From IMG/VR virus record IMGVR_UViG_3300018424_000006, positions 155,820 through 219,819 of that record: 64,000 nucleotides of DNA; one strand, 5' to 3'. Shown piece after piece: positions 3,904-49,648 of the stretch. Below the pieces are notes generated by a model that was given only the letters and a program-made list of their open reading frames with translations, was not told the origin of the DNA and did no database searches. A program made the position numbers and the translations under genes. How positions within the stretch are numbered: position 1 is the stretch's first letter; every line of letters starts with the position of its first letter.

Positions 3904-3916
3904 GTAATATAGAATT
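3904..3916 (-). promoter_or_regulatory. phiKZ-type early promoter (TATATTAC) upstream of phuZ
   Basis: Minus strand reads AATTCTATATTAC; the same motif recurs upstream of six other minus-strand genes; TATATTAC is the described phiKZ early promoter core. Confidence 0.75.
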
Positions 3917-3995: not shown

Positions 3996-4778
3996 ATGAA
4001 CGCTATTGACTATGCTTTGAATAATCTTTTTCAACGTATACCTTCTGAACTAATCACTCAGGCTTTTGGTACTTCTCCTGTCTATGGTTATATTGATAAT
4101 CGTAGCTTAGAGCAGCGAGTTCGTGAAACCGTAATTGATTCTTTTGTTTCTATAGACTGCAATTTAGTAGGTGGACAACAGGTAATGCTTCCGATGAGTA
4201 CTTTGCCAGGCAAGCCTGTGGAAACTGGATGGATTTATGAAATACCTTTAGCCATGACTCAAGGAAGAAAGATTACTTCTGTATTGGGAGTAGAGTATTC
4301 GTCTGGCAATGGGAACCTTTCTAATCCTGATATGAATGCAATGGGTAGAAGTTTAATGGATATGGTAAACTTCGCTACAGGGCCTTCCGGAGGCGTCGCT
4401 AGCGGTAACGTCATGCTGGTGGGACCTAATACTGTTTTCGTTGGATCGAATATGGGAACCGGTAGCTTGTACCTGCGGTGCATGATTGCGAATGATTCAC
4501 AGATGGCTAATCTGAATCCACGTGCACTTCCTATCTTTGCTCAGTTATGTGAGTATGCTTGTAAAGGAATGATTTACAATGCATTACGAATTAAGCTTGG
4601 TGAAGGTTCGATTACGGGTGGTTCTTTAAATAGCTACTTGAATCAGATACTGGATGAATACTCTGATTCTTTTACGTTGTACAATGAACTACGTGACGGT
4701 AAGTGGAAGAAGGTTTCTATTCTTGCTGATGACTTCACTCGACGTGAGTTGACTAGAATGTCATTACCTAGAAGCTAA
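3996..4778 (+). CDS. Conserved phiKZ-like virion structural protein
   Basis: 260 aa with GAGG RBS; the MNAIDYAL...IP.ELI..AF N-terminus is recalled from conserved phiKZ-like virion proteins divergent from phuZ. Confidence 0.7.
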   Translation: MNAIDYALNNLFQRIPSELITQAFGTSPVYGYIDNRSLEQRVRETVIDSFVSIDCNLVGGQQVMLPMSTLPGKPVETGWIYEIPLAMTQGRKITSVLGVEYSSGNGNLSNPDMNAMGRSLMDMVNFATGPSGGVASGNVMLVGPNTVFVGSNMGTGSLYLRCMIANDSQMANLNPRALPIFAQLCEYACKGMIYNALRIKLGEGSITGGSLNSYLNQILDEYSDSFTLYNELRDGKWKKVSILADDFTRRELTRMSLPRS

Positions 4779-4789
4779 AAGCATATTTA

Positions 4790-4818
4790 CTCTATACCCA
4801 GCATAGCTGGGTATAGAG
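4790..4818 (+). terminator. Rho-independent terminator
   Basis: CTCTATACCCAGC-ata-GCTGGGTATAGAG 13-bp stem followed by CTTTATT. Confidence 0.8.
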
Positions 4819-4830
4819 CTTTATTCTGTT

Positions 4831-5060
4831 TTAAATTTTCTAAATGTAAATCATATAGATATTAATAATTAATTATAATATTAATTTAATATTTATTTTT
4901 ATTCTTTAAAATTACTTAAAAAATTTATTCCCTTATATTATAGACAGTAATATATTTGACGAGGAACGAGGCAAATATATATACATTTAGTAGTCAATAT
5001 CAGAACTACTAAAAATAGACCTATTTTAAGCTACTTTCTATCTTAGGATAGGAGGTAGTT
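4831..5060. other. Extremely AT-rich intergenic tract with inverted repeats
   Basis: 6 G/C in 4831-4920 and none in 4859-4903; inverted repeats at 4950-4958/4972-4980 and 5031-5042/5047-5058. Confidence 0.6.
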
Positions 5061-5133
5061 ATTATGCTGTTTAAAAATACAAATAGGTATTAGGGTATGA
5101 ATTAAACATAAACCAACCAAAAGGAATTTAGAT

Positions 5134-5700
5134 ATGAACTTCTTTAAGTTATTATGGAAACGGATAGTAATATCCATTCTAGTGGATAGACCTTTCTTTG
5201 CTTTCTCAAATGAGATAGTGGAAAGTTTCTATCGGGGTTATAAGTCAATAGGTCGTACTAGGTTTACCCAAGAGCTGGATAGGCTCTTCGTGGCAAAGAG
5301 AGCTAAGATTGATCCTAAGTACACAAGTCCTAAAGCTTTAGGTTCTTATTCAGCCTTAGAAAGATTGAAAACTTTAAACTACTGGGCTGCTTATCACACT
5401 AACCTATTTGCAGACGCATGGGCGCTTATGTCTAAAGAGCCATTGTTTTTCTCTATCTTACCTCTAAGCAAGACTCGATACGAAGACGAAGATAGTCTAC
5501 AGGACTATCTAGAAGACTCTAGAGATCTTTTTACGTTTTTGGATATAGAAGATCTATGGAGCAGTAGTCCTAGACTAGATTTATATAACCGCCTAGTCGC
5601 TTACAAGGAAGTCTATGAAGAACGTGGTCAGTTAGAATACTGGCAACGAATCTATGATATGCTAAAACCAAGATTGATTGAGGTGGGTTATGACCTATAA
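5134..5700 (+). CDS. Hypothetical protein (KR-I-x-L-x-P family)
   Basis: 188 aa with AAGGA RBS; N-terminus LLWKRIVISILVDRPF. Confidence 0.7.
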   Translation: MNFFKLLWKRIVISILVDRPFFAFSNEIVESFYRGYKSIGRTRFTQELDRLFVAKRAKIDPKYTSPKALGSYSALERLKTLNYWAAYHTNLFADAWALMSKEPLFFSILPLSKTRYEDEDSLQDYLEDSRDLFTFLDIEDLWSSSPRLDLYNRLVAYKEVYEERGQLEYWQRIYDMLKPRLIEVGYDL

Positions 5701-6247
5701 GAATTGGTTCAAACGAAAGATCCTAAGTTTCTTTCTTGATATTCCTATGGACTATGTTCCGATGCGTTATGCAGACGCAGCATTTGCACATCTGACTAAT
5801 GGTCCTTGGGAAACCAGAAAGTATCGTGCTCGGATGTATTTAGCTCAGTGTAGAAGTATTCCGTGCAAAGACTCTACCCCGGATGTACTTTATTTATATC
5901 CGTTCCATGAGGTACTTACCTATCTTGCCGATAATCAATACGACATGGAGAAGGCCAAGTTCTTATGGAAAGATAAGAACATGGCCAAACACTGGATGGA
6001 AGTCTTTAGGGTATATAAGCTAGCGGATGGTACATATTCCAATAGTAATTTTATTTCGAATTACTATCTTAAGTTGGCAGGCTATATCGATATGGGTACT
6101 CCCGGGTTTTTAGAAGCGCTGGATGACTTTATTATGAATTTGAATGTAGTAGCCTACTCTGTCCAGGATGCCGATAAACACGTTGCTCTAGTTCAGGAGA
6201 TTGAAGTTTATAAGAAGCTACAATCTAAGCTTAGGGGCGAATCATGA
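5690..6247 (+). CDS. Hypothetical protein (KR-I-x-L-x-P family)
   Basis: Start moved to ATG 5690 (GAGGTGG RBS); N-terminus WFKRKILSFFLDIPM. Confidence 0.7.
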   Translation: MTYKNWFKRKILSFFLDIPMDYVPMRYADAAFAHLTNGPWETRKYRARMYLAQCRSIPCKDSTPDVLYLYPFHEVLTYLADNQYDMEKAKFLWKDKNMAKHWMEVFRVYKLADGTYSNSNFISNYYLKLAGYIDMGTPGFLEALDDFIMNLNVVAYSVQDADKHVALVQEIEVYKKLQSKLRGES

Positions 6248-6807
6248 TCAGACTAAAGCGCTATATACTAGAGGTCGTCCTACAACGGCCTCTAGAGTCG
6301 CTCACGGATAAAAACATCCTTGAGATATGGCATTACCTTCCTGATGGCGTAAAAGGTCTTATGGGGGTTTACAGCGCCCCTAAGGAATGGATTAGGAATC
6401 TTTATTTCCTAGGACTTCTCCCTATAACGGAATTTACGATCTCTGAGATTCATGATTTCTTTATAAATCCAATGTGTGATATCCATCCAGATATTCCGGG
6501 CGAACCTATACTTCCATATTACTTATCTGAAGCAGCGAAGCATAAACGCAAAGTAGAGATCTTTAAAGACTTCTGGGAAACCTGTCCTCCAAAGACTTTA
6601 TTTGCATTCTTTATGAGTCCTCATCAAAGTACTCATAAGCTGCTGTTAGAAAATGTAATAAGGGAGACGGGTAATGGCCGCTACGATTATCAGAAGTGGC
6701 TACTGAAGTATGGGAAAGATTATAGTCATATTTTCCATCAGTTACCGATGCCTTTTATACATGTCGATTTAATAACTAAGTTGGAGTTTGATTTAAGACG
6801 TAAATAG
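6244..6807 (+). CDS. Hypothetical protein (KR-I-x-L-x-P family)
   Basis: 187 aa; ATGA overlap with the upstream stop; N-terminus RLKRYILEVVLQRPL. Confidence 0.7.
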   Translation: MIRLKRYILEVVLQRPLESLTDKNILEIWHYLPDGVKGLMGVYSAPKEWIRNLYFLGLLPITEFTISEIHDFFINPMCDIHPDIPGEPILPYYLSEAAKHKRKVEIFKDFWETCPPKTLFAFFMSPHQSTHKLLLENVIRETGNGRYDYQKWLLKYGKDYSHIFHQLPMPFIHVDLITKLEFDLRRK

Positions 6808-6865
6808 GTTGTTAATCCTATGTATTAGCTTGTTCATTAATTAACCTGAAAAAGGAGAAAAGGTT

Positions 6866-7408
6866 ATGAGCTTTAAAATCTCAATGAAAACTTTGTTTAT
6901 AAAGTTTTTACCATTAGCGTTGTTGTCTGGGTTGTCTCGACGCTTAACTGCTGCGTTGTTTATTGGTCCTCGCGGTTTTAAATTAGATAACGAAGGTCTT
7001 GATATGGCAATCGCTGCTATCAAGAAAACGCCTCTGTCAATCTTTCTGCGTCCATTTGAATTACTAGAGAAGCTTTATCTAGCTAATAAGCTAGAGGCTT
7101 CTCAATTGTTCAATGAAGAGATTGCAAACTTTACTGAAGAATCCTACATCGCCATTATTAACCGCTACCTGACTCTGAATCCAGAGCGGGCTAGAATGAT
7201 ATGGAACTGGACCTCTTTAGATCGTCAATTACATATTCTTTTGAATAGCCATTTCTTGTCTGCTAAGATCAGCAACCTTGGCGATGTAATTGCAAACGAG
7301 CCGTTGATTAAAACTGTTTGGGATGCAAACACCCCATTCAAGAAAGGTGAGCGTCAGCGTGCTAAGAACTTAATCCGCAGAATGTATCCGCATCTGGATT
7401 TGACTTAA
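6866..7408 (+). CDS. Hypothetical protein
   Basis: 180 aa with AGGAGAA RBS; helical composition. Confidence 0.75.
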   Translation: MSFKISMKTLFIKFLPLALLSGLSRRLTAALFIGPRGFKLDNEGLDMAIAAIKKTPLSIFLRPFELLEKLYLANKLEASQLFNEEIANFTEESYIAIINRYLTLNPERARMIWNWTSLDRQLHILLNSHFLSAKISNLGDVIANEPLIKTVWDANTPFKKGERQRAKNLIRRMYPHLDLT

Positions 7409-7518
7409 AATAAACAGATGACCTTATACTTTGTAATTACTATTGATCCAGTCGTTAACTTGTTTGGTAGTGGTTCTTTAAAAATTCGATTTTAAATCAA
7501 ATTTTAAATTAGCCCTTA

Positions 7519-7947
7519 GGAACAATATTGATAGTTCCGTGCCTTTTATGGTGGGCAATAAGACTAACAGTAAAGAGACTCCTGTTAACTGGTCCTCGTT
7601 TTCCCGGGTTACACTGACCGTTAGTCTTCTCCAAATTTACGTCTTCTTGTCGGATCTGCTGGGTGTCCGACATTTAGGTTGGAAAGGTATGAAGGCCGCT
7701 ATAAGCTTTAGCGTTTTTTTGCGGCTTCTCCCACTCGTGCTGCTTTGTTACTTACGCTCGTTATTGGCAACGTCCTTTTGGTTGGTTCGTCGTGCCAGAA
7801 TAAGCTATTCCGGATATTTTTCTAATGGGTTTATATCCGTGCGACTCACAGCGGCCTTTATACCGATCCTTCTCCACTTCTCCCTTACCCGCACAGACTT
7901 TGTCCTCACTGCAGTCTTCGGATTGCAGTGGGGCGTTTTCTGCCGTT
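7519..7947 (+). ncRNA. Candidate large structured non-coding RNA (family unassigned)
   Basis: No credible ORF. Multiple stems, including a 15-bp long-range helix 7686-7700/7850-7864 and a 13-bp cUUCGg hairpin 7904-7933. G-U pairs work only on the plus strand. Boundaries are approximate. Confidence 0.6.
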
Positions 7948-8007
7948 AAAAAAAAATAAAGAGGCTCCTGAGTTATTGTAATCAACCCAGCCAAGAGAAA
8001 AACTTCG

Positions 8008-8994
8008 ATGTTAAAATTACATAAACTCCCCTACTCTCGATTTCAAGAACTTGTCGATGAAGATATCTTCCCTGCCGCTATCGGTGATGAGCTACTTGCT
8101 TTCCAAATCCAGAAGAAAGAAGGTAACTTGTTTATCGCTTATTTCGATATGGATAAATTCGGTACCGTTAATACTGAAACTAACGTTACCTATCGTGAGT
8201 TACAACTACCGGTAGAAGTTGAAACTATCGGTAGATTGCGCCTAGAATGTAGTAATGCATTCGCGGTCCCAGTAACATATAAAGACCCCCAAACTAAAAA
8301 GATCGTCAATCAGCTACTGCATGTCAAAGATTATCTGCCGGGTCAAGAAACTCTAATCACTTTTGATAATCTTAATCTGACAGATCACTATGAGCTTGAG
8401 ATTAATGAGAAAAGTTTTAAGGTAACTCCGGCAACTGGTACTGTACTGAAGATTTCAGATTCCGATAAACTTGGTGAAATTTGTGATAGTGCTGTTGAAG
8501 CGATCAATAAAAACCCTGAAATCCATCTACAGTTTGCTTTTGAATTGCAGATGCCGTTCAGTATTCTAGGCGGTATTGATAATCTGTTCTTCGCATATAT
8601 GGATTTAGCAAAAGGACATCGCACGGCATTTGTAATCGATAGAAATACTGGCGAAGCTAAGTTGTTGTCTCAGTTATTTGCACCTCTTAATCTAGAACGC
8701 AAGTCAATAGCGATTTGCGGACATAACTCCGACGGCTTCTTTGTGCTCTTCGGCCATCAAGATGGCGAGCGTAGTGGTTCGATTATGTTCGTTACTTATG
8801 ACGAACTACGTAACTGGAAGATCACAGATGGCTCTTTAACTACTGAAGCGATTGTGTTCCGAGACGAAATCTATCTTCTTGGTGAAGATGGTTACTTCAT
8901 TAATGATGCCACTGGTGATATCGTTGGTCGTCTTAATGAAGACGAACTACTTGTTGCAGTATCTCCAAATCTACCTTTCATTTTGATTGGTTAA
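8008..8994 (+). CDS. Hypothetical beta-rich protein (possible beta-propeller)
   Basis: 328 aa ORF followed by a terminator; repeated short hydrophobic strands with G/D turns; weak RBS. Confidence 0.7.
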   Translation: MLKLHKLPYSRFQELVDEDIFPAAIGDELLAFQIQKKEGNLFIAYFDMDKFGTVNTETNVTYRELQLPVEVETIGRLRLECSNAFAVPVTYKDPQTKKIVNQLLHVKDYLPGQETLITFDNLNLTDHYELEINEKSFKVTPATGTVLKISDSDKLGEICDSAVEAINKNPEIHLQFAFELQMPFSILGGIDNLFFAYMDLAKGHRTAFVIDRNTGEAKLLSQLFAPLNLERKSIAICGHNSDGFFVLFGHQDGERSGSIMFVTYDELRNWKITDGSLTTEAIVFRDEIYLLGEDGYFINDATGDIVGRLNEDELLVAVSPNLPFILIG

Positions 8995-9007
8995 AAAAGA
9001 AAAAAAG

Positions 9008-9039
9008 ACTACTCCCTAGGCTAATGCCTAGGGAGTAGT
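9008..9039. terminator. Bidirectional terminator
   Basis: ACTACTCCCTAGGC-taat-GCCTAGGGAGTAGT 14-bp stem between convergent genes. Confidence 0.85.
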
Positions 9040-9048
9040 TAGTCTGCC

Positions 9049-9459
9049 TTAAAGAGTAGATTCTGGGAATATCTTCTTTATGGTAATGTTGACTAGTGGA
9101 ATCACATCTAGGTATGGAACTAAGATATCTAGGACCGCTTGACGATCGTAGTTATCCACCCACCTACTATCTAGAGTTAGGAAACCAGCATTGCGTACTT
9201 TATCTCGAGCAGGATGAGAATACGTTATCACTGTTTGGAATAGGATATCGTAGTAATAGTTCTCGGCATACTTGATAGCAGCTTCTGCGATCTCTTCTGG
9301 ATTGAAATTCTCGCCTACACGACCACTAAATAGAAGATAGCCAAAATGATCCTTGGCGACCCTATGGGCTCCGTACAGAGCCATTGTTTCCGACCGGTCA
9401 ATGAAGTTATGTACTTCATCGATAAGTGCTAGCGAAAGGGGCAAAGTTTCATATTGCAT
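9049..9459 (-). CDS. Hypothetical protein
   Basis: Start moved to ATG 9459 (AAGGAG RBS); 136 aa. Confidence 0.7.
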   Translation of the reverse strand: MQYETLPLSLALIDEVHNFIDRSETMALYGAHRVAKDHFGYLLFSGRVGENFNPEEIAEAAIKYAENYYYDILFQTVITYSHPARDKVRNAGFLTLDSRWVDNYDRQAVLDILVPYLDVIPLVNITIKKIFPESTL

Positions 9460-9470
9460 ATCCAATCTCC

Positions 9471-10439
9471 TTATTGACATTCTGCTAAACTCGAAAAATA
9501 ATCTTCCAGCATTTTACGTACAAATTCTTTGCACTCGCTGCGACTATTATATTTCTTAAAGTTTTCCAGTCTTTTCCAAGGACTTCTACGATCCACTGCC
9601 ATATAAAAGTTTCCAATTCGAATGGAAGGAACACCTTCTCTAGAAGTACCTAGAGAAATAACTCCCGTTCCAGTATGGTTTTCTTCTATGGCCGGATAGT
9701 AGACATCGACAAATGGACCATTATACCCCCTATGATAGAGAACTCCATAGCTATCTTGCTTCTGACTAATCTCTATAATCCTTGGGAATAAAGAGTATAT
9801 AGTCTCCACTGCCTTTTCTTGCTCAGCATTTAAAGCCAGAGTAATAAAAGACCGTTTGACAGTTTCCTTGCCTCGATTAAGGCTAATATACATAGGAGAA
9901 TATTTAGTACGTAGGTTGTACGTTTTATCGAAACAAAAGAACTGACGTTCAAGAATGAGCCTGGCTCGTTGAAATAAAACAAGAAGTGCTACATCCTCGA
10001 AACTTACATTTAAGTTACTAAGATATAACTTAGTAGTTACGCTAAGCCCAAAGAAATCTTTGTCAGGCTCAGGCCTGCTTGGCTTTAGTAGTTTATGCAT
10101 CGATTCAGCTAGCATCTCTTTCTGTTCACATTCCACGTCTTTTTCAAAACGCCCGTGACGAAAGTAATCATAGATGTTTTTATAGATCGGAAAATACTTT
10201 CTAAGTGCAAGTATTTTTTTAATTTTCTCTTGGTCTTCTCCGCCATGTCGTAGAGTATTTCCTGAGTCGCTATACATCCACCACCAGTCGTAATGGTCAA
10301 GTAGTAAGAAAAAATCTTCTGGGGTATAGTCCTCTGGATTAACCAGCGTTCTTTTTCGTATCATCAAATCCCCAATTAATTTACCGTGCTCTTGGGTATC
10401 CTTTATAAACTGCTTTTCTTCTGTTGTTAAAAATCGCAT
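9471..10439 (-). CDS. Hypothetical early protein
   Basis: 322 aa with AGGAGAG RBS, downstream of an early promoter motif; contains HYDWWWMYSDS. Confidence 0.75.
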   Translation of the reverse strand: MRFLTTEEKQFIKDTQEHGKLIGDLMIRKRTLVNPEDYTPEDFFLLLDHYDWWWMYSDSGNTLRHGGEDQEKIKKILALRKYFPIYKNIYDYFRHGRFEKDVECEQKEMLAESMHKLLKPSRPEPDKDFFGLSVTTKLYLSNLNVSFEDVALLVLFQRARLILERQFFCFDKTYNLRTKYSPMYISLNRGKETVKRSFITLALNAEQEKAVETIYSLFPRIIEISQKQDSYGVLYHRGYNGPFVDVYYPAIEENHTGTGVISLGTSREGVPSIRIGNFYMAVDRRSPWKRLENFKKYNSRSECKEFVRKMLEDYFSSLAECQ

Positions 10440-10507
10440 TTGTGTTGCTCTCCTTTAAATGGATTATTTTATAGGAGACTTAGATTATATATCACAGCCT
10501 CACTTAA

Positions 10508-10520
10508 GTAATATAGAATT
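10508..10520 (-). promoter_or_regulatory. Early promoter (TATATTAC)
   Basis: AATTCTATATTAC on the minus strand, ~70 nt upstream of the 10439 start. Confidence 0.75.
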
Positions 10521-10600
10521 CAAATATTCTAAAAATACATATCCTACTTAGCGTATGAAGTAGTAACCAACCAAATTAAAAAAACCTACGGAGAAGGAAA

Positions 10601-11098
10601 ATGATTACATATGTTGAAGGCGATGTCTTCGATAAGAAACTCCTTAAAGAAAATGACTTCTTTTTACATCTAGCCAATTGCCATAAAACAATGGGTGCGG
10701 GTGTAGCTCTGGGAGTGAAGCATTTTATGCCGGAGCTATATCAGGCTGACCTAAATGATTCTCGAACCCCAAAACAGAGGCTGGGTTCTTATAGTACCGC
10801 CAGCGTTACTCTGACTGAAAGTATCCCTAGTATGAGAATTCCTGCCGAAAAAATAACGGGTGTCAATATTTATGGCCAGTTTTATTACGGTAGAGAACAA
10901 ACCTACGTACGGTATAAAGACTTAGAGGCAGCACTTTTAGCTTTCCATAAATCTTTCGAGTTGAAAGAAACCTCTAGAATCATCATGCCTATGATGGGTT
11001 CCGGTCTAGCTGGCGGTAGTTGGAAACGTGTTGAAGAAATCATCGGACGCACTTTCCCATTGCAAAAAGTAACAGTAGTTATTAAGAAGGATCAGTAA
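10601..11098 (+). CDS. Macrodomain (ADP-ribose binding/processing) protein
   Basis: ITYVEGDVF, ANCHKTMGAGVA, NIYGQ and MPMMGSGLAGGSW match macrodomain motifs. Confidence 0.88.
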   Translation: MITYVEGDVFDKKLLKENDFFLHLANCHKTMGAGVALGVKHFMPELYQADLNDSRTPKQRLGSYSTASVTLTESIPSMRIPAEKITGVNIYGQFYYGREQTYVRYKDLEAALLAFHKSFELKETSRIIMPMMGSGLAGGSWKRVEEIIGRTFPLQKVTVVIKKDQ

Positions 11099-12661: not shown

Positions 12662-12807
12662 TGCTCGTCTACCCACTTAGGGTCGTTATAGCACGAAGAA
12701 CAGTGATCCTGATATTCACGATTACCGTCTTCGTCTACTCCAGTTAAAACGATCTGTGCTCCGCAGCAGTCAGAAACTTTATCGTCCATATCTGTAGTTG
12801 TTTGCAT
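12658..12807 (-). CDS. 49-aa zinc-finger-like microprotein (absent from ORF track)
   Basis: MQTTTDMDDKVSDCCGAQIVLTGVDEDGNREYQDHCSSCYNDPKWVDEQ; GAGGAGAA RBS; ATGA coupling to the next gene. Confidence 0.75.
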   Translation of the reverse strand: MQTTTDMDDKVSDCCGAQIVLTGVDEDGNREYQDHCSSCYNDPKWVDEQ

Positions 12808-12811
12808 TTTT

Positions 12812-12985
12812 TTATTTCTCCTCTCTACCAGATTTATTGTCCGTCACTCTAACCGGCCTCATATCCCAACTACATTTACTGCAGTGATCAGAATAGTAAT
12901 GCCAGCCATTTTTAAATTTGCCGTAATAATCAACAGGCACATTGCAGCAGGGAGAAATAAAATCACCCTTCTTCTTAGTCCTCAT
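12812..12985 (-). CDS. 57-aa zinc-finger-like microprotein (absent from ORF track)
   Basis: MRTKKKGDFISPCCNVPVDYYGKFKNGWHYYSDHCSKCSWDMRPVRVTDNKSGREEK; first ORF after the early promoter at 13019-13031. Confidence 0.75.
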   Translation of the reverse strand: MRTKKKGDFISPCCNVPVDYYGKFKNGWHYYSDHCSKCSWDMRPVRVTDNKSGREEK

Positions 12986-13018
12986 CTAGCAACCCTTTTA
13001 TTATCTCATGTCAATATA

Positions 13019-13031
13019 GTAATATAGAATT
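13019..13031 (-). promoter_or_regulatory. Early promoter (TATATTAC)
   Basis: AATTCTATATTAC on the minus strand. Confidence 0.75.
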
Positions 13032-13057
13032 GAAATGTTTTCCACAACGGCAAAAAA

Positions 13058-13084
13058 CTCCATGCCCCAACTACGGACATGGAG
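13058..13084 (-). terminator. Rho-independent terminator
   Basis: CTCCATG...CATGGAG stem with an A6 run (U-tract on minus), just after the 13094 stop. Confidence 0.6.
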
Positions 13085-13093
13085 TGAAAGGCC

Positions 13094-33721: not shown

Positions 33722-34843
33722 TTACTCCTTAAAGTACTTTTCAGAGGCTTGTCGTGAAATCTCCATAAGTACCGCATTAACAATACCCATTATTTCAGCC
33801 GACAAAACGATACGATCCATGACGGATCGCCAACCAAAGATCATATCTATACTATCACCTTCTAGAGTCTCGTTGGTACCAGTAAGGATGCCGCCAAACA
33901 CAGTTTTTAACTGACTTGCCAAAACACCCTTATCCCCAATACCTACCCCTAGGTCTTGATCGATAAATATTTCAATTGCTACTTGACCCGGCTCCACTTT
34001 GTTGCCGGATACATAAACATTTTTATCTACATAACCACTAGTGGCCATGCCGCTACTCGTCGCTTTAACGTGTTGTGCGCGACGGCGGTCTCCCGCTTCT
34101 ACAATCTTCTTAACTGACTCAGACATGTTCTCTTTCTTAGAGCGATAAAGAACTTGTATGTCGGATACCTTACCCACAATTTTAGCTTTAGGGGCATGGT
34201 TAGAAAACTTACTTAACGCAGCTAATGCTTGTTCGTCAATAGAGTCTAAAGAAACACTACCGTCTTGGATAATACATAAAGGACTATCTAGATCAGTCTC
34301 GTCCCCAATCTTGACCATATTTAGAACATGGTCATCTTCATCAACAACAATAACTTTGCGTTTAGTATAAGCAGAACCTAGTTTCTCAGCTAAAGCAGCA
34401 CTAATCAAAGAACTATCTTCTAAGGTTCCATTACCTTCCATGAAAGCAACATTGGCAATCGCCCCAACCTTAAATGTAACGTTCTTTGGATTTAACCAAT
34501 CACGTTCGAAGTAGTCCTTGTTCCATGCAACGATATCGCCTTCTTTAACTTTGTCTCCAACTTTAAAGTCGGTAATAATTTCCTGAGGAATAGTTAAACC
34601 GCCTTGGATACCATGGTTAGTCCCAATCTTAACACCGGATGTTGAACCGTCTTTATTTTTGATGTAGACATATTCGTCAGTAATCTTTTCAATTACCCCA
34701 TCCATCTTAGCAGTATATGCAAACTCATCTGCTGTACGCGCACCAATCACCTGTTCATAACCAGTACGAAGAGGCATGGATTGATAACCCTTAGCATGAA
34801 CCATAGCAGACATCTGTACGTTCAATAAATTGGCTCTTTTTCC
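33722..34843 (-). CDS. Virion RNA polymerase beta subunit (gp178-like), exon 2
   Basis: In-frame GKRANLLNVQMSA continues exon 1 HDD, matching RpoB HDDANRALMGANMQ; also contains EDS and GDK...QLKT beta motifs. Confidence 0.88.
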   Translation of the reverse strand, partial: GKRANLLNVQMSAMVHAKGYQSMPLRTGYEQVIGARTADEFAYTAKMDGVIEKITDEYVYIKNKDGSTSGVKIGTNHGIQGGLTIPQEIITDFKVGDKVKEGDIVAWNKDYFERDWLNPKNVTFKVGAIANVAFMEGNGTLEDSSLISAALAEKLGSAYTKRKVIVVDEDDHVLNMVKIGDETDLDSPLCIIQDGSVSLDSIDEQALAALSKFSNHAPKAKIVGKVSDIQVLYRSKKENMSESVKKIVEAGDRRRAQHVKATSSGMATSGYVDKNVYVSGNKVEPGQVAIEIFIDQDLGVGIGDKGVLASQLKTVFGGILTGTNETLEGDSIDMIFGWRSVMDRIVLSAEIMGIVNAVLMEISRQASEKYFKE

Positions 34844-36375
34844 TGTTGGTATTAACTAGGTGTCGTTAGTACCTAGCCAGCAGTAATCTGCTGCTGCATG
34901 TCGCCATGCAGACTAGACCATATCTTCACCTCCAGCTTTACCTGCTGAGGTGCTCTCCGTTTCGAGTCCACTTGGACCCTACACCGTGATAAGCGGTTGG
35001 TCGTTGAACCTTGATCTTAGTCTTTCTAGACCTTAGACCCTTGGCTGCTGATTGTCTCTCACTTTACTTTTTCAAACATTCACGCTCACCGTTTCCAGTC
35101 ACGTTGTAGTAGTAAGCTTCTGAGTAGACCGGGTATGCAATTTATTAAAAATACCCGGCCCAGTTAAGCCATAACAACTTAACAGTTTCCAGCAATTAGA
35201 AGAGATTCTGACTAATCATTTCTGAATTAGCAGGACAGAATCAGTTTTAATTTCTTTGTAAATATCAGAATAGTTGTAGAACTTAAAGCCCTTCTTACGA
35301 GTTTTACCGGGACATTTGTTTATCCAGTAAGACATGGTTGTTTTACCAACCTCGAAGCTTCTAGCCGCATCAGCTAGTCTGATATAAATCCTCTCTTCAC
35401 CAGTCTCATCATTCTTGCAATAGATAGCACTATAGCCAGAACTCTTTTCGTAGTTAAGAACTGGATCATCCACAGTCTCCCATGGAGTTCCATCATCCAT
35501 CTTCAGCAAGTACAGGTTACCTTTAACAGCGAAGACTTCGAATGGATTATTTTTAATCCTAGTTGTAATGTTACTTTCCGGTAAGTCAATGGCACGTGCC
35601 GCTTCCCGGAAAGAACCATAACGCTCTATAGACCCCTTACAGTAGTCTTTTACCAGTATGGGTATCGATCTACCATAATTCTGCATTTCAAGCCGTAGTG
35701 CTTCATTAGAGGCCTTTTTCCATGGCGTTGTCGAAGTCCCGGACTTGTATAGCTTCCCTTCAGGAAAGATTTTCTGTCCGTCGCTACCTATGCGCTTCAG
35801 TAACTCGCCGCTACTCAATCCAAGTGTCTCCATTGCAATGGAGCGAAGAGGAAACTCTTCTATTTCTCCAGTGAATGGATCATAACTTATTAGAGGTGAG
35901 CGTGTACGCTTAAGTCCTGTGTCGACTGAATGTCTTACGTTCTCTTTAGCTGTACACCATTCAAGATTCTCTGCCGAATTGTCCTTAGGTAAACCATTTT
36001 TATGATTTACTTGTAAAGACTCCTTATTTGGAGTTTCTGGATAAAAGGCGGCTGCTGCTAATCGATGAAGAGCTACATGTACCTTCTTTCCGCTATCGTC
36101 AATAAAGCGGGTAGTAATGTAGCCTCTATCGTTAGGACTGACTTCCAGTAGACGACCGGTTTCTTTTACCTTAAATCTACCTTTGGCATTTACGCAATAA
36201 CGGCTAAAGTTAGGGATTTCGAAGAAGGTCTCGTCGCCCTCAACTGGTTTTGGATTAAAAATATTTCTCATTGTAATATACCTAATACTGATACATACAA
36301 TAAGATGACCTAAAATACTAACTGTACAAATTATAGATTAGGTCGCCAAAGAAATTATGAAACTAATTTTAGTTT
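34844..36375 (-). mobile_element. Group I self-splicing intron (IA2-like) with homing endonuclease ORF
   Basis: P1 GAUGAU/GUCAUC with a terminal U-G pair; P3 CUCUUC (35199-35204)/GGAGAG (34953-34958); P4 UGCUG (35190-35194)/CAGCA (35046-35050); P7 GACCA (34998-35002)/UGGUC (34916-34920); R element GUUCAACGACC, S element AAGAUAUGGUC; P9 hairpins. Confidence 0.92.
35216..36271 (-). CDS. Intron-encoded NUMOD4-HNH homing endonuclease
   Basis: NUMOD4 (IPNFSRYCVN..G), HRLAA..F, VNHKNG..DN..ENLEWCT..EN..H, and C-terminal NUMOD1-like helices (SFREAARAI, LADAARSF). Confidence 0.93.
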   Translation of the reverse strand: MRNIFNPKPVEGDETFFEIPNFSRYCVNAKGRFKVKETGRLLEVSPNDRGYITTRFIDDSGKKVHVALHRLAAAAFYPETPNKESLQVNHKNGLPKDNSAENLEWCTAKENVRHSVDTGLKRTRSPLISYDPFTGEIEEFPLRSIAMETLGLSSGELLKRIGSDGQKIFPEGKLYKSGTSTTPWKKASNEALRLEMQNYGRSIPILVKDYCKGSIERYGSFREAARAIDLPESNITTRIKNNPFEVFAVKGNLYLLKMDDGTPWETVDDPVLNYEKSSGYSAIYCKNDETGEERIYIRLADAARSFEVGKTTMSYWINKCPGKTRKKGFKFYNYSDIYKEIKTDSVLLIQK

Positions 36376-39180: not shown

Positions 39181-39207
39181 AATACTTGCCTTCTTGTTTT
39201 AATGGGT

Positions 39208-40824
39208 TTATTTGAAGTTCTTGAGTACCCAAGAGCTTACGTCGGTGGTTGTGTCATACATCAAACCACCAGAAGCCTGTAGGTACATTTCCTTCCCGTT
39301 TAAAATCTTACGCATTTCTTTAACAGATTCGTCCGAGTAGACTAAAGTCAAGGAGACAGTATCTCCATCGAAATCAGCTCCCAGAGGCTTAAGCATAGCG
39401 CTATGCGGAATCGTCGTATCAACGAAACTCTGTGAACCTTTATCTGCGTCTGGCATCTCAGGGAATACGCTTCCACTTGAAGTCCAGTCGTCAGCCAATT
39501 CAGTTAAAGAGATAGCAGGGTTGGTAGATTTACAATATAGCTTAGTAGGATAGATCGAACCTAAGCCAGTAACAGGATAGCGAGTAACGAAACCATACAC
39601 ACGGTCGCTAACAGAGTGCGCAGCATAATAAAATAACTCCGCCCAAGTCAATGGATAAACATTCTCTTTCTCTAGGTGAGGAGGAAGCTCTTCCATATTC
39701 TTAAAGATACGAAAAGACTTCTCATCTTTATAGATAAGAGCTAGAAAATGACCATCAACCATAACAGGCTTGTGTCTACGTTCAAGTAGATCAAAACCAT
39801 TCATGGTATCGTTAAGGCCATCTATAGTTGTCCATTTGTCCCGAGTCTTTTGTTTTAATTTTACAGGAACTAATTTAAGTGTTTTAGGATCGATTAAAGG
39901 AACCTCTCCATCTGGGTTACTGACAATATCAACTAACAAAGTTGTATTCAGCTTATGCTGAATCAAAGGAGAACAACCTTTAATAAACTGATGGATACCA
40001 ACTTGAGTTGTATTGATATCGGCAAGACGTGGACTATCCATGTCCTCTGCTGTCATGTCCATGGCACTGATAACATTCCGTGTACTACCAAATACCCGAC
40101 GTGCAGCCCACTTGCCTTGTATGAACCCTGATTTACCTGAGATCATATTCTCAAGGTATGCGTAAACTTCCAGTACTGCTCGTTGTACTTTCCATCGAGT
40201 CAAGTCTAGATCTGCAGTTTCCTTATTCTGCATTACAGGACTGATTGTTGCAGCTGAAGTTAGAACGGAGCGATAAAGTTTACTTAACTCGTGTTCGATT
40301 GGACGGCCACCTTCTGTCATCTCGATATCTCGAAGACCGGCAGGTAGGACAACCAATTTATCCATTAGAGCAACCTTACGATATTTCTCTATTAGATCGA
40401 TATTAAGATCACGTCGCTTTGATTCGTTCCGTGCAAACTTAATATCATTAAAATGTTTAACGAAGAAATGGAATCCAGTATCTCCGTCTAGTGCATCACT
40501 TCGAACAAAGTCTTTTAACTTCTTATCGAAGATTGCATATCCTTTACCTTCAAGAATATCTTTATAAAGACCTTTCAATCTAAAGATTTCCATAAGTAGT
40601 TTAGGATGAAAAACGGTTGTATTCAGTTTGATGAGTGCGTGTTGTTGATTACGCTTTTGTTCGCCAGCCAAACCGAATATAAGAGTGGAGTATAAACCTG
40701 CTGGATGATACTCTCCGCTGGACGTATCCCAAATGTCCGATGCAGTGATCTCAGCTAGATGACCTACCTTCTGTTTGGTTGGTTCAAGTATAGAGATATT
40801 AAAGGGTAGGCGCTTCTGTTGCAT
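39208..40824 (-). CDS. Virion RNA polymerase beta-prime subunit (gp180-like)
   Basis: Catalytic LGADFDGD, VTRYP and KSGFIQGKWAARR motifs. Confidence 0.92.
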   Translation of the reverse strand: MQQKRLPFNISILEPTKQKVGHLAEITASDIWDTSSGEYHPAGLYSTLIFGLAGEQKRNQQHALIKLNTTVFHPKLLMEIFRLKGLYKDILEGKGYAIFDKKLKDFVRSDALDGDTGFHFFVKHFNDIKFARNESKRRDLNIDLIEKYRKVALMDKLVVLPAGLRDIEMTEGGRPIEHELSKLYRSVLTSAATISPVMQNKETADLDLTRWKVQRAVLEVYAYLENMISGKSGFIQGKWAARRVFGSTRNVISAMDMTAEDMDSPRLADINTTQVGIHQFIKGCSPLIQHKLNTTLLVDIVSNPDGEVPLIDPKTLKLVPVKLKQKTRDKWTTIDGLNDTMNGFDLLERRHKPVMVDGHFLALIYKDEKSFRIFKNMEELPPHLEKENVYPLTWAELFYYAAHSVSDRVYGFVTRYPVTGLGSIYPTKLYCKSTNPAISLTELADDWTSSGSVFPEMPDADKGSQSFVDTTIPHSAMLKPLGADFDGDTVSLTLVYSDESVKEMRKILNGKEMYLQASGGLMYDTTTDVSSWVLKNFK

Positions 40825-48911: not shown

Positions 48912-49640
48912 CTACTCATAACTATAATCCCCAGACGTATGAAGATAGTCCTCAGTAACGTCTGTACAATTCCCTTCATCATCATAGCTAAACTTCAGCT
49001 TAACTGAGTCAAGAGTACGTACGACGTATTCGATTTTCACTTCATCCAACTTCCCGTCTTTATGATAAGTCAGATGCGCTTCAAAGTGTTCGTCATAATC
49101 ATCAAAGCGAGATAGACGCCATTGATTAATATCGCAGGGTTCGAATGCACAGCGAGCATCAAGGAATCGAGCGTCAATCCCAGCCTTGAATTCCTCGCCC
49201 TTATCTTTACCGTAGTAATCAATATCGAAGCCATTGAAGTCCTCATCGTTCTCGTTGATAACAAGTACGTGTCCATACGGATCGTATTTGAAAGAGGCAA
49301 ACTGATGTTCTTCAGAGCCCTCTTTGGCAAAGATAAGCTTCTCTGGACGATTATCGGGACGAAAGGTACCGGAGATTTGGAATACCTCGTCTCCGTTATC
49401 TACTTCCCAGATAATGCCTTCTTTGTCACACTTAAGTGTAACGCCATCATCTAGCTCTATATCAACACCATCTTTAACTTCTTTGATGGACTTAATGTCA
49501 TCTAGCGTATCGAAACCCGGAGTATAATCTATTAGTTCTTTCGCTAGTTCAATATTTTTGAATAAGCGACTGCGGCGTAAGATGGTTTGCTCGAACACAT
49601 TCATGCCCATCATATCCATCGTTATTTGCTTAAGTTCCAT
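48912..49640 (-). CDS. Hypothetical acidic beta-rich protein
   Basis: 242 aa with AGGAG RBS; FKYDPYGHV, YHKDGKL and FSYDDEGN repeats. Confidence 0.72.
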   Translation of the reverse strand: MELKQITMDMMGMNVFEQTILRRSRLFKNIELAKELIDYTPGFDTLDDIKSIKEVKDGVDIELDDGVTLKCDKEGIIWEVDNGDEVFQISGTFRPDNRPEKLIFAKEGSEEHQFASFKYDPYGHVLVINENDEDFNGFDIDYYGKDKGEEFKAGIDARFLDARCAFEPCDINQWRLSRFDDYDEHFEAHLTYHKDGKLDEVKIEYVVRTLDSVKLKFSYDDEGNCTDVTEDYLHTSGDYSYE

Positions 49641-49648
49641 GTGAACTC

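What the first reader, a model, noticed from the sequence alone, without database searches (positions are those of the whole stretch)
7626..7883. Four copies of CTTCTCC: anti-Shine-Dalgarno RNA or GGA-rich protein sponge
The 7-mer CTTCTCC occurs at 7626, 7725, 7869 and 7877, mostly at helix junctions, far more often than chance for ~260 nt. On the plus strand it complements GGAGAAG. GGAGAA is the dominant RBS of many genes here (phuZ, 2379, 6866, 10601, 12807, 16320, 29607, 50418, 50857, 55151), so the RNA could act as a multivalent translation regulator. On the minus strand the region carries about 14 GGA triplets by my count, reminiscent of CsrB/RsmZ-type CsrA sponges. Either mechanism would be a new phage regulatory system; both are inference.
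Basis: partly seen in the sequence, partly recalled or inferred. Interest (0 to 1): 0.75.

Follow-up and report, generated by a model that had tools for sequence, protein, structure and literature searches.

The report
Abundant orphan noncoding RNA, jumbo phage
The four CTTCTCC copies lie in a real, highly expressed non-coding RNA of an uncultured nucleus-forming jumbo phage, but the dominant RNA species is a ~170-nt structured core that carries only one of them and whose loops match the leaders of phage genes, so it probably acts by base pairing; that role is still inferred.

Summary
The 7-mer CTTCTCC is at 7626, 7725, 7869 and 7877, against 0.06 expected from local composition. The stated span has 9 minus-strand GGA triplets, not 14, and the full complement GGAGAAG sits at only 3 of 215 ribosome-binding sites.

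The 599-nt gap 7409-8007 encodes an RNA. In salt-marsh metatranscriptomes it is 10-30 times deeper than the flanking genes. The dominant species is a core, 7694 to about 7862, closed by a 15-bp helix. Six runs hold this core almost whole.

The plus strand is favoured. It has a sharp 5' end at 7694 with a read-2 adapter, the phage's own terminator signature at 7904-7945, and plus-strand neighbours. The 133-codon ORF over the region is not coding.

No Rfam family, paralogue or homologue was found in phage, viral or metagenome collections, or in 38 related jumbo-phage records.

Only the core is enriched in 10-mers complementary to phage translation-initiation regions (10 against 2.05, p about 0.0005). 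The signal comes from two hairpin loops that match a recurrent leader motif, AACC(A/C)A, including a perfect 15-nt match to the leader of gene 5134.

Best reading: a processed antisense regulator with several seed loops. The minus-strand CsrA-sponge idea is not supported. The mechanism remains inference.

The parts
7448..7945 (+). Probable primary transcript or precursor span, about 490 nt. The 5' limit comes from where RNA contigs start. The 3' limit is the terminator.
   Evidence: Metatranscriptome contigs start at 7448 (X3) and 7459 (X4). Depth jumps from about 5 to 58-69 there. Terminator at 7904-7945.
7694..7862 (+). Dominant stable RNA species ('core'), about 170 nt. The 5' end is exact. 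The 3' end is approximate: 7858-7885 is possible, because random-primed libraries under-cover 3' ends.
   Evidence: X3 contig 7694-7862 at word depth 72, against 2-3.5 for neighbouring genes, with an Illumina read-2 adapter joined directly to 7694. The X12 contig ends at 7861. The core is held at share 1.00 in 4 runs, 0.85 in 2 and 0.69 in X12. Fold z-score -3.8.
7686..7700 (+). 5' strand of the 15-bp closing helix of the core domain. The mapped 5' end, 7694, lies inside it and leaves a 6-bp GC clamp.
   Evidence: MFE and centroid folds agree; pairing probability about 1.
7850..7864 (+). 3' strand of the closing helix.
7626..7632 (+). CTTCTCC copy 1, on the 3' shoulder of stem 7560-7628 in the less structured 5' domain.
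   Evidence: 5' domain fold z -0.7. The extended 17-bp match to one TIR (genome 59879) is a single case.
7721..7743 (+). Hairpin L2: a 5-bp stem with a 13-nt loop (7726-7738). It carries CTTCTCC copy 2 (7725-7731), the only copy inside the core.
   Evidence: TTCTCCC is complementary to GGGAGAA, found in 9 TIRs against 0.5 expected from CDS density.
7765..7797 (+). Hairpin L3. Its apical part, 7773-7787, is a perfect 15-nt complement of the leader and SD of gene 5134. Its GGTTGGTT complements the recurrent leader motif AACCAACC.
   Evidence: (-23.9 kcal/mol, 15 contiguous pairs).
7811..7839 (+). Hairpin L5: a 7-bp stem with a 15-nt loop region. Positions 7823-7834 are complementary to ATAAACCCATTA in the leader of the RNA polymerase beta gene and to AAACCCATTA in two further TIRs.
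7869..7883 (+). CTTCTCC copies 3 and 4 (7869-7875, 7877-7883), in the single-stranded linker between the closing helix and the terminator. No assembled RNA contig covers them.
7904..7945 (+). Intrinsic terminator: a 13-bp GC-rich hairpin with a cUUCGg loop (7904-7933), followed by TTTTCTGCCG. This fits the phage-wide, orientation-specific signature of a strong hairpin followed by TT(A/T/C)TGCCG.
   Evidence: One search found 43 TT[A/T/C]TGCCG sites, 21 of them intergenic and most preceded by a strong hairpin; this site is one of them.
7548..7949 (+). 133-codon ORF that gene callers annotate as a hypothetical protein. Judged spurious. Three of the four CTTCTCC copies are in frame as Leu-Leu.
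   Evidence: Codon score -0.137, against 0.187 +/- 0.091 for short genes. No SD. The terminator lies inside it. No homologue among 5.8 billion proteins. A 2-nt deletion at 7714 in the X12 variant shifts the frame. The abundant RNA starts at 7694, downstream of both candidate ATGs.
5111..5125 (+). Best predicted target: the leader and SD of gene 5134-5700, positions -23 to -9. This is the first of four tandem ORFs directly upstream of the RNA and possibly on the same primary transcript.
39200..39211 (-). Predicted target: the leader of RNA polymerase beta exon 1 (gene 36355-39180), 12 nt complementary to loop L5.

Best explanation
The gap 7409-8007 is a non-coding RNA gene on the + strand of an uncultured phiKZ-like (nucleus-forming) jumbo phage.

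A transcript of about 490 nt runs from about 7448 to the terminator at 7904-7945. It is either made from its own promoter or is the 3' end of the 5134-7408 operon. It is processed to a very stable core of about 170 nt (7694 to about 7862), whose ends are clamped by a GC-rich helix.

The core displays three hairpin loops:
- L2 carries CUUCUCCC and is anti-SD.
- L3 carries UCCUUUUGGUUGGUU.
- L5 carries UAAUGGGUUUAU.

These loops are complementary to ribosome-binding regions and to a recurrent leader motif, AACC(A/C)A, found in about 5% of the phage's genes. The most likely mode of action is base pairing with those leaders, in trans or in cis with the leader of gene 5134 on the same precursor, to control their translation or stability. 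The logic is that of S. aureus RNAIII, the Rsa RNAs, LhrC, or the icaR 3'UTR.

Shown:
- the motif repeat
- expression and abundance
- the 5' end at 7694
- the non-coding nature
- the orphan status
- the excess complementarity of the core to initiation regions

Inferred:
- the strand (about 85% sure)
- processing as opposed to a second promoter
- the 3' end
- the loop exposure
- the whole regulatory mechanism
For: Expression:
- Word depth is 58-72 over 7448-7862, against 2-9 for genes on both sides, in two metatranscriptomes.
- The region is held by 8 RNA runs.
- The core alone is held at 0.85-1.00 in six runs and accounts for all that five of them hold.

Strand:
- A read-2 adapter is fused to + sequence at 7694. 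This is a sharp end of the kind reverse transcriptase run-off makes at RNA 5' ends, while the right end is ragged.
- A cUUCGg-capped terminator with the phage's orientation-specific TT(N)TGCCG signature is present.
- The neighbouring genes 5134-8994 are all on the + strand.

Non-coding: (frameshifting variant).

Structure: core fold z -3.8 with a 15-bp closing helix.

Complementarity:
- Whole RNA: 16 TIRs carry a complementary 10-mer, against 5.9 +/- 2.6 in shuffles (p 0.001) and p 0.006 against random genome segments. The reverse strand has 2.
- The signal is confined to the core: 10 against 2.05 +/- 1.6 (p 0.0005), and 1.4 +/- 1.35 for CDS-internal segments.
- The leader motif is enriched 4.5-fold upstream of starts.
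- There is a 15-nt perfect duplex with the leader of gene 5134 (-23.9 kcal/mol) and a 12-nt duplex with the RNA polymerase beta leader.
Against: - There are no homologues, so there is no covariation and no test of loop or motif conservation.
- A full cofold model shows no difference between initiation regions and CDS controls (-3.81 against -3.80 kcal/mol). Loop-limited duplex energies show only small shifts, apart from a few top targets.
- The 15-mer match alone has a genome-wide blastn E of 0.32.
- The k-mer excess rests on essentially two loop/motif pairs. It equally fits 'TIR-like modules on the minus strand'.
- Gene starts were called crudely.
- Logan contigs carry no direction, and their depth is a contig mean.
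- Library strandedness is assumed from my knowledge of usual JGI practice.
- The host is unknown, so host targets are untested.
- Three of the four CTTCTCC copies are outside the abundant species.
Confidence: 0.4

Rival explanations
1. The core is a protein-binding, decoy or scaffold RNA whose function lies in its fold or in protein recognition of its loops. Examples would be titrating a host or phage RNA-binding protein, or an anti-defence decoy. The complementarity to leaders would then be incidental, or would reflect mimicry of something that binds those leaders.
For: It is very abundant and stable, with clamped ends and significant structure. It lies in a hypervariable accessory region between conserved anchor genes, where counter-defence genes often sit. 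The closest long relative has a different highly structured non-coding stretch of about 450 nt in the same region (z -7.6) with no anti-TIR signal. Thermodynamic target tests are flat.
Against: No match to any protein-binding RNA family in Rfam. Neighbouring proteins give no RNA-binding clue. This reading does not explain why two loops match both variants of a leader motif.
Confidence: 0.25
2. The core is a by-product: a nuclease-resistant remnant of the 3' untranslated end of the 5134-7408 operon. It accumulates because of its GC-clamped fold and has no function of its own. The CTTCTCC copies are a by-product of the local T- and C-rich composition.
For: There is no terminator between gene 6866-7408 and the RNA, and the only terminator is at 7904-7945. 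The core is much more abundant than its flanks in most runs, as expected for a decay intermediate. No conservation is detectable.
Against: A gap of about 600 nt is costly in a genome that is 92% coding. The biofilm variant, about 96% identical overall, shows no listed change in roughly 7721-7830, the part that carries the three loops. The core has excess complementarity to initiation regions. The CTTCTCC excess is not explained by composition.
Confidence: 0.17
3. The RNA is made from the minus strand and acts as a mimic of ribosome-binding regions or as a GGA-rich sponge (CsrB/RsmZ-like, or a decoy for 30S subunits or a leader-binding factor). On that strand the loops read AACCAACCAAAAGGA, AUAAACCCAUUA and GGGAGAAG.
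For: The k-mer statistic cannot tell 'antisense on plus' from 'TIR-like on minus'. The minus strand has 14 GGA in 7448-7940, slightly more than shuffles give (p 0.03). The thermodynamic strand test is undecided. The contigs have no direction.
Against: The adapter type and the sharp end at 7694 fit a + sense 5' end. No early promoter motif and no terminator signature lie on the minus strand here, while the + strand has the signature. Most minus-strand GGA are predicted paired, and only 4 lie in the abundant core. No CsrB/RsmY/RsmZ match.
Confidence: 0.08
4. The region encodes a small hydrophobic protein (ORF 7548-7949, 133 aa, or its 86-aa version from ATG 7690), and the CTTCTCC copies are Leu-Leu codons.
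For: An open frame of 133 codons is unusual by chance. Three of the four motif copies are in frame. Gene callers predict it in some assemblies. An MK-plus-hydrophobic start follows ATG 7690.
Against: Codon score is 3.6 SD below short genes of this phage. There is no usable SD. The terminator hairpin lies inside the ORF. The abundant RNA starts at 7694, after both ATGs. A natural variant has a 2-nt deletion that shifts the frame. No homologue exists. A-poor, T-rich sequence lowers stop-codon frequency.
Confidence: 0.03

Closest known systems
S. aureus RNAIII and the Rsa RNAs (UCCC-loop sRNAs); Listeria LhrC (PMC2790875, PMC4132741)
   Same: Abundant, stable, multi-hairpin RNAs that present several C/U-rich sequences in loops or single strands. 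They pair with Shine-Dalgarno regions of several mRNAs. The seeds are redundant.
   Different: There is no sequence or structural homology. The RNA here is phage-encoded, the motif is CUUCUCC and not UCCC, and only one copy lies in the dominant species. The better-supported seeds are G/U-rich loops that pair with a leader motif upstream of the SD. Nothing has been tested experimentally.
icaR mRNA 5'-3' UTR pairing in S. aureus (PMC3868564)
   Same: A 3' untranslated region carries an anti-SD sequence that pairs with the leader of the same transcript. Here loop L3 is a perfect 15-nt complement of the leader and SD of the first gene of the upstream operon.
   Different: Co-transcription of 5134 through 7940 has not been shown. 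The distance is 2.7 kb. The 3' part accumulates as a separate processed RNA and could act in trans.
3'UTR-derived processed sRNAs of enterobacteria (CpxQ, SroC type; from my own knowledge); CisR of Vibrio (PMC13250501)
   Same: A stable regulatory RNA released from the 3' end of an mRNA, much more abundant than its parent mRNA.
   Different: Those RNAs keep the parental terminator as their 3' end. Here the assembled core stops about 40 nt before the terminator hairpin and begins inside a long helix.
sRNAs mapped in phiKZ and 201phi2-1 (PMC8244752, PMC11512511)
   Same: Non-coding RNAs of nucleus-forming jumbo phages, found by transcriptomics, with function unknown.
   Different: Those are under 250 nt, mostly 5'UTR-derived premature termination products. 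The conserved one lies upstream of a tail gene. No similarity to this RNA was found (blastn against 50,697 phage records; covariance model).
CsrB/RsmZ-type CsrA sponges
   Same: Multiple short repeats in a structured RNA. The minus strand is somewhat GGA-rich.
   Different: The strand is wrong on present evidence. GGA density is about half or less, the copies are mostly paired and not in hairpin loops, and no model matched.

Membership tests
CsrB/RsmY/RsmZ CsrA-sponge RNAs | Many A(N)GGA motifs exposed in hairpin loops on the transcribed strand | tested here: not met
   Minus strand: 9 GGA in 7626-7883, 14 in 7448-7940 and 4 in the abundant core, with 5 ANGGA in all. Most are predicted paired. 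The transcribed strand is most likely +.
CsrB/RsmY/RsmZ CsrA-sponge RNAs | Match to the family covariance models | tested here: not met
   No hit at gathering score in the window, nor at E up to 10 in 7300-8100.
CsrB/RsmY/RsmZ CsrA-sponge RNAs | Binding of CsrA/RsmA of the host | not testable with these tools
Base-pairing sRNAs with C/U-rich anti-SD seeds (RNAIII/Rsa/LhrC type; a functional class, not a homology family) | Stable, abundant non-coding transcript | tested here: met
   10-30 times the depth of flanking genes. The core is held in at least 7 metatranscriptomes. It is non-coding by codon score, a frameshifting variant and the absence of homologues.
Base-pairing sRNAs with C/U-rich anti-SD seeds (RNAIII/Rsa/LhrC type; a functional class, not a homology family) | Several C/U-rich seeds exposed in loops or single strands | tested here: inconclusive
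   Three of the four CTTCTCC copies are predicted mostly unpaired, but only one lies in the dominant species. The structure is predicted from one sequence only.
Base-pairing sRNAs with C/U-rich anti-SD seeds (RNAIII/Rsa/LhrC type; a functional class, not a homology family) | Seeds complementary to the SD or leader of target mRNAs beyond chance | tested here: inconclusive
   k-mer excess in the core is p 0.0005, but it is driven by loops L3 and L5 and not by CTTCTCC. GGAGAAG is at 3 of 215 RBSs. Cofold energies show no TIR preference.
Base-pairing sRNAs with C/U-rich anti-SD seeds (RNAIII/Rsa/LhrC type; a functional class, not a homology family) | Demonstrated repression or activation of targets | not testable with these tools
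   Needs reporters, toeprinting or RIL-seq.
Any Rfam family (6S, Y RNA/YrlA, tmRNA, ROOL, GOLLD, group I intron and others) | Covariance-model match | tested here: not met
   The only window hit is the group I intron at 34894-35259. Nothing credible matched in 7300-8100 (best E 1.6). No tRNA or tmRNA.
Protein-coding gene (hypothetical protein of 133 aa) | Codon usage, RBS, conserved open frame, homologues | tested here: not met

The most novel reading that the evidence does not exclude
The core is a dedicated 'anti-leader' RNA. Its two G/U-rich loops (GGUUGGUU and AAUGGGUU) each pair with one variant of a leader element, AACC(A/C)A(Y)(Y), shared by about a dozen phage genes. These include the non-virion RNA polymerase beta subunit, a macro-domain gene and the first gene of its own operon. 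A third loop is anti-SD. This would be a phage-encoded RNA that switches a translational regulon on or off in the cytoplasm, in a phage that keeps transcription inside a protein nucleus. No such post-transcriptional timing layer is known for jumbo phages.
Probability: 0.2. Interest if true: 0.75.

Novelty: new member of a known kind. Interest (0 to 1): 0.45.

Why it matters
Nucleus-forming jumbo phages separate transcription from translation, and little is known about how they control translation. Their few mapped non-coding RNAs have no known function. This locus gives environmental evidence, from eight independent metatranscriptomes, for a phage RNA that far outnumbers neighbouring mRNAs. 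It has a defined 5' end and a compact fold, and its loops match the leaders of specific phage genes, including an RNA polymerase subunit. The result is a concrete, testable hypothesis with named loop-leader pairs. It also corrects an annotation, because the 133-aa 'hypothetical protein' called here in public assemblies is almost certainly not a gene. Two limits apply: the phage is uncultured with an unknown host, and the RNA has no detectable relatives, so the claim cannot yet be supported by covariation.

Tried and rejected
Homologue searches that found nothing:
- blastn of the 599-nt gap against 50,697 phage records.
- Flanking proteins, tried by pattern scan, by tblastn and, for the downstream protein, against 5.8 billion proteins (self only).
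- The ORF translation used as a handle (self only).
- A 17-mer in viral contigs (chance matches).
- An 18-mer in metagenome contigs (59 loci, of which only the phage's own contig L083 shows extended similarity).
- Paralogues in the genome.
- Covariance model R1 of the core against 0.98 Mb of related loci and 38 related IMG/VR records, with a positive control in the phage's own genome.
- All independent assemblies of this phage are 100% identical here, so there is no microdiversity to exploit.

Synteny. In the closest long relative (51% aa identity in a neighbouring gene), the stretch between the DUF7484 and macro-domain anchor genes has entirely different genes and a different structured non-coding stretch. 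That stretch has no CTTCTCC cluster (one copy in the locus, outside it) and no anti-TIR signal.

Uninformative tests:
- A thermodynamic test of which strand folds better was undecided.
- RNAduplex of the whole RNA against initiation regions gave artefactual long-loop duplexes.
- Cofold binding energies showed no preference for initiation regions.

No functional clue came from the neighbours in PHROGs, Pfam or the protein atlas.

I compared the motif region with the 16S rRNA 3' tail recalled from memory and dropped the idea as numerology. A TATG at 7688-7691 as a possible late promoter for the 7694 end rests on my memory of phiKZ promoters and could not be confirmed in the papers I read.

Full report
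WHERE THIS IS. The window is the last 64 kb of a 219.8-kb virus record with direct terminal repeats. It encodes a PhuZ tubulin, split multisubunit RNA polymerase beta subunits and a phiKZ-type tail sheath. The closest cultured relative, a Vibrio phage, shares only 40% amino-acid identity in the sheath. This is therefore a deep-branching, uncultured, phiKZ-like, presumably nucleus-forming jumbo phage. The runs that hold its DNA are salt-marsh metagenomes. The finding lies in a 599-nt gap, 7409-8007, between two + strand orphan ORFs at 6866-7408 and 8008-8994.

THE OBSERVATION.
- CTTCTCC is at 7626, 7725, 7869 and 7877 on the + strand.
- Local dinucleotide shuffles give 0.06 copies on average and never gave four. 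Any 7-mer reaches four copies in 2-7% of shuffles. The repeat is real and local. Genome-wide the word is unremarkable.
- The minus strand of the stated span has 9 GGA, not 14. Fourteen is the count over 7448-7940.
- With crude gene calls, GGAG precedes 71 of 215 starts, GGAGAA 25 and GGAGAAG 3. The complement of the full motif is therefore rare at ribosome-binding sites.

IT IS AN RNA, AND AN ABUNDANT ONE.
- The 599-nt gap is held by eight metatranscriptome runs.
- I laid two of them, plus two runs with relatives, on 5100-10900. Contigs over 7448-7862 have word depths of 58-72, while genes on both sides have 2-9. DNA contamination cannot produce such a step.
- In run X3 the contig 7694-7862 (depth 72) carries 23 nt of Illumina read-2 adapter fused directly to base 7694. 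The 5' part, 7448-7618, has depth 10.8. In X4 one contig spans 7459-7765 at depth 69.
- A second index search with 7694-7862 alone returned shares of 1.00 in four runs, 0.85 in two and 0.69 in the biofilm run with a variant.
- This core makes up 24% of the sampled words of the gap. Five runs held only 23-30% of the gap. In those runs, essentially only the core is assembled.
- The dominant species is therefore about 170 nt, 7694 to about 7862. The right end is seen at 7862 and 7861 in two unrelated data sets. Random-primed libraries under-cover 3' ends, so the true end could lie up to about 20 nt further on.

STRAND.
- Contigs have no direction and a thermodynamic comparison was undecided. Four things point to the + strand.
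- First, a sharp adapter-fused end is what reverse-transcriptase run-off gives at an RNA 5' end, whereas 3' ends are ragged. The sharp end is the left one.
- Second, the adapter is the read-2 type, which marks the sense strand in dUTP-stranded libraries. That these libraries are of that type is my assumption from usual JGI practice.
- Third, 7904-7933 is a 13-bp GC-rich hairpin with a cUUCGg loop followed by TTTTCTGCCG. A strong hairpin followed by TT(A/T/C)TGCCG recurs in this genome: of 43 such sites, 21 are intergenic, most preceded by a strong hairpin. In the one case I checked against gene calls (window 13055), it lies just past the 3' end of a gene on the same strand.
- Fourth, the genes at 5134-8994 are all on the + strand. 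The phage's early promoter, ATTCTATATTAC, is absent on either strand here.
- I put the + strand at about 85%.

NOT CODING. Gene callers annotate a 133-aa ORF at 7548-7949 in some assemblies, and three CTTCTCC copies are in frame as Leu-Leu. The evidence against it:
- Its codon score is -0.137, against 0.187 +/- 0.091 for 100 short genes of the phage.
- It has no SD.
- The terminator lies inside it.
- The abundant RNA starts downstream of both candidate ATGs.
- A natural variant has a 2-nt deletion at 7714.
- It has no relatives among 5.8 billion proteins.
- The open frame is explained by the A-poor, T-rich composition.

ANATOMY.
- The 5' part, 7448-7693, is not significantly structured (z -0.7). 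It contains stem 7560-7628, with CTTCTCC copy 1 on its 3' shoulder.
- The core domain, 7686-7866, folds with z -3.8. It has a 15-bp closing helix (7686-7700 with 7850-7864).
- Hairpin L2 (7721-7743) has a 13-nt loop that starts with copy 2.
- Hairpin L3 (7765-7797) has an apex reading UUUUGGUU.
- A short hairpin lies at 7798-7810.
- Hairpin L5 (7811-7839) has a 15-nt loop region.
- The mapped 5' end, 7694, lies inside the closing helix and leaves a GGCCGC/GCGGCC clamp.
- Copies 3-4 (7869-7883) lie in the linker before the terminator and outside every assembled RNA contig.

NO RELATIVES.
- Rfam finds only a group I intron elsewhere in the window, and nothing credible here. There are no tRNA or tmRNA genes.
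- blastn against phage records found nothing.
- Exact-word scans of viral and metagenome contigs found only chance matches and the phage's own contig.
- A search of the phage's own genome found no paralogue.
- A covariance model of the core found nothing in 0.98 Mb of related loci or in 38 related IMG/VR records. The positive control in the phage's own genome scored 233 bits.
- Independent assemblies of the phage are identical here.
- The flanking ORFs are orphans too.
- In the closest long relative (51% identity in a neighbouring gene), synteny holds on both sides. The stretch between a DUF7484 gene (window 3996-4778) and a macro-domain gene (window 10601-11098) is replaced by other genes and by a different, strongly structured non-coding stretch.
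- The RNA therefore sits in a hypervariable accessory region.

WHAT MIGHT IT DO.
- I asked whether the RNA is more complementary to the phage's translation-initiation regions (-35 to +6 of 214 crude gene calls) than expected.
- For the whole RNA, 16 regions carry a complementary 10-mer. Shuffles give 5.9 +/- 2.6 (p 0.001), and the test against random genome segments gives p 0.006. The reverse strand has 2.
- Split by part, the excess is confined to the abundant core: 10 against 2.05 +/- 1.6 (p 0.0005), and 1.4 +/- 1.35 for CDS-internal segments. The 5' domain and the tail, which hold three of the four CTTCTCC copies, show none.
- The signal comes from L3 and L5.
- L3 (7773-7787) is a perfect 15-nt complement of positions -23 to -9 of gene 5134, including its SD. 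Gene 5134 is the first of four tandem ORFs just upstream.
- The GGUUGGUU of L3 complements AACCAACC, and the AAUGGGUU of L5 complements AACCCAUU. Together these form a leader motif, AACC(A/C)A(A/C/T)(C/T), present in 12 of 214 upstream regions against 2.7 expected.
- L5 matches 12 nt of the leader of RNA polymerase beta.
- The L2 sequence UUCUCCC complements GGGAGAA, found in 9 initiation regions.
- Cautions. The 15-mer alone has a genome-wide E of 0.32. A cofold model shows no preference for initiation regions. Loop-limited energies shift only slightly apart from the top targets. The statistic cannot separate 'antisense on plus' from 'leader-like on minus'.

VERDICT.
The 'multivalent anti-SD' reading is not supported as stated, because only one copy lies in the dominant species and the copies contribute nothing measurable.
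- The broader idea does survive: a phage RNA that pairs with ribosome-binding regions. It survives in a different form, as a processed, clamped core of about 170 nt with three loops that match leaders and SDs of specific phage genes.
- The closest functional analogues are RNAIII, the Rsa RNAs and LhrC (PMC2790875, PMC4132741) and the icaR 3'UTR-5'UTR pairing (PMC3868564).
- Jumbo-phage sRNAs mapped so far are unrelated and of unknown function (PMC11512511, PMC8244752).
- I rate the existence of an abundant, + sense, non-coding RNA at about 0.85, and the base-pairing mechanism at about 0.35-0.4.
- Rivals are a protein-binding or decoy RNA (0.25), a functionless stable remnant (0.17), a minus-strand mimic or sponge (0.08) and a small protein (0.03).

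Noticed in passing
window 33722-39180 (- strand); intron 34894-35259: A group I intron (Rfam 82.8 bits) with an HNH homing endonuclease ORF (35216-36271) splits the RNA polymerase beta-subunit gene. Exon 1 (36355-39180) matches profile positions 362-1051 of phrog_3148, and exon 2 (33722-34825) matches 1058-1421.
   Followed up: partly
genome-wide; in the window at 3904, 10508, 13019, 16355, 30167, 52045 and 57312 (written on the + strand as GTAATATAG): A strongly conserved early-promoter-like motif, (A)TTCTATATTAC(T)TTAATGA. Exact intergenic copies almost all point leftwards (minus strand), and the motif is often preceded by CGTGTTCTAG. It resembles my recollection of the AT-rich phiKZ early promoter.
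   Followed up: partly
genome-wide (43 sites, 21 intergenic); in the window at 7938 (+) and 13055 (-): Terminator hairpins are followed by a conserved, orientation-specific TT(A/T/C)TGCCG(T), most often TTATGCCGT. It might be a combined terminator and promoter or a processing signal.
   Followed up: partly
leaders of 12 genes, for example window 5111, 10565, 16343, 29107 and 39200: A recurrent leader element, AACC(A/C)A(A/C/T)(C/T), lies 8-36 nt upstream of start codons. It is enriched 4.5-fold. Its function is unknown; it could be a translational enhancer or a transcript 5' end.
   Followed up: partly
window 5134-7408 (+): Four tandem ORFs of 180-189 aa with weak mutual similarity (20-23% identity and a shared N-terminal pattern). 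They have no Pfam or PHROG match and no relatives. They lie directly upstream of the RNA, and no terminator follows them.
   Followed up: partly
L008:19352-19880 (- strand of the locus); the same stretch in L016:2431-2988 is 98.9% identical: The closest long relative (a 228-kb contig) has a different non-coding stretch of about 450-500 nt, directly downstream of its DUF7484 gene. It has an extremely stable predicted fold (z -7.6) and ends in a bidirectional terminator. It has no Rfam match and no similarity to the RNA studied here.
   Followed up: partly
window 4779-5133: A 355-nt gap with only 23% GC lies between the DUF7484 gene and the four-ORF cluster. It has a strong hairpin at its start and very AT-rich repeats, and is probably a terminator and promoter region.
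   Followed up: no
genome 147513-148304 (upstream of the window); window 48986-49648 and 12662-13093: Further gaps of 430-790 nt were left by my crude ATG-only ORF calling. They may hold other non-coding RNAs or genes with non-ATG starts. I did not examine them.
   Followed up: no
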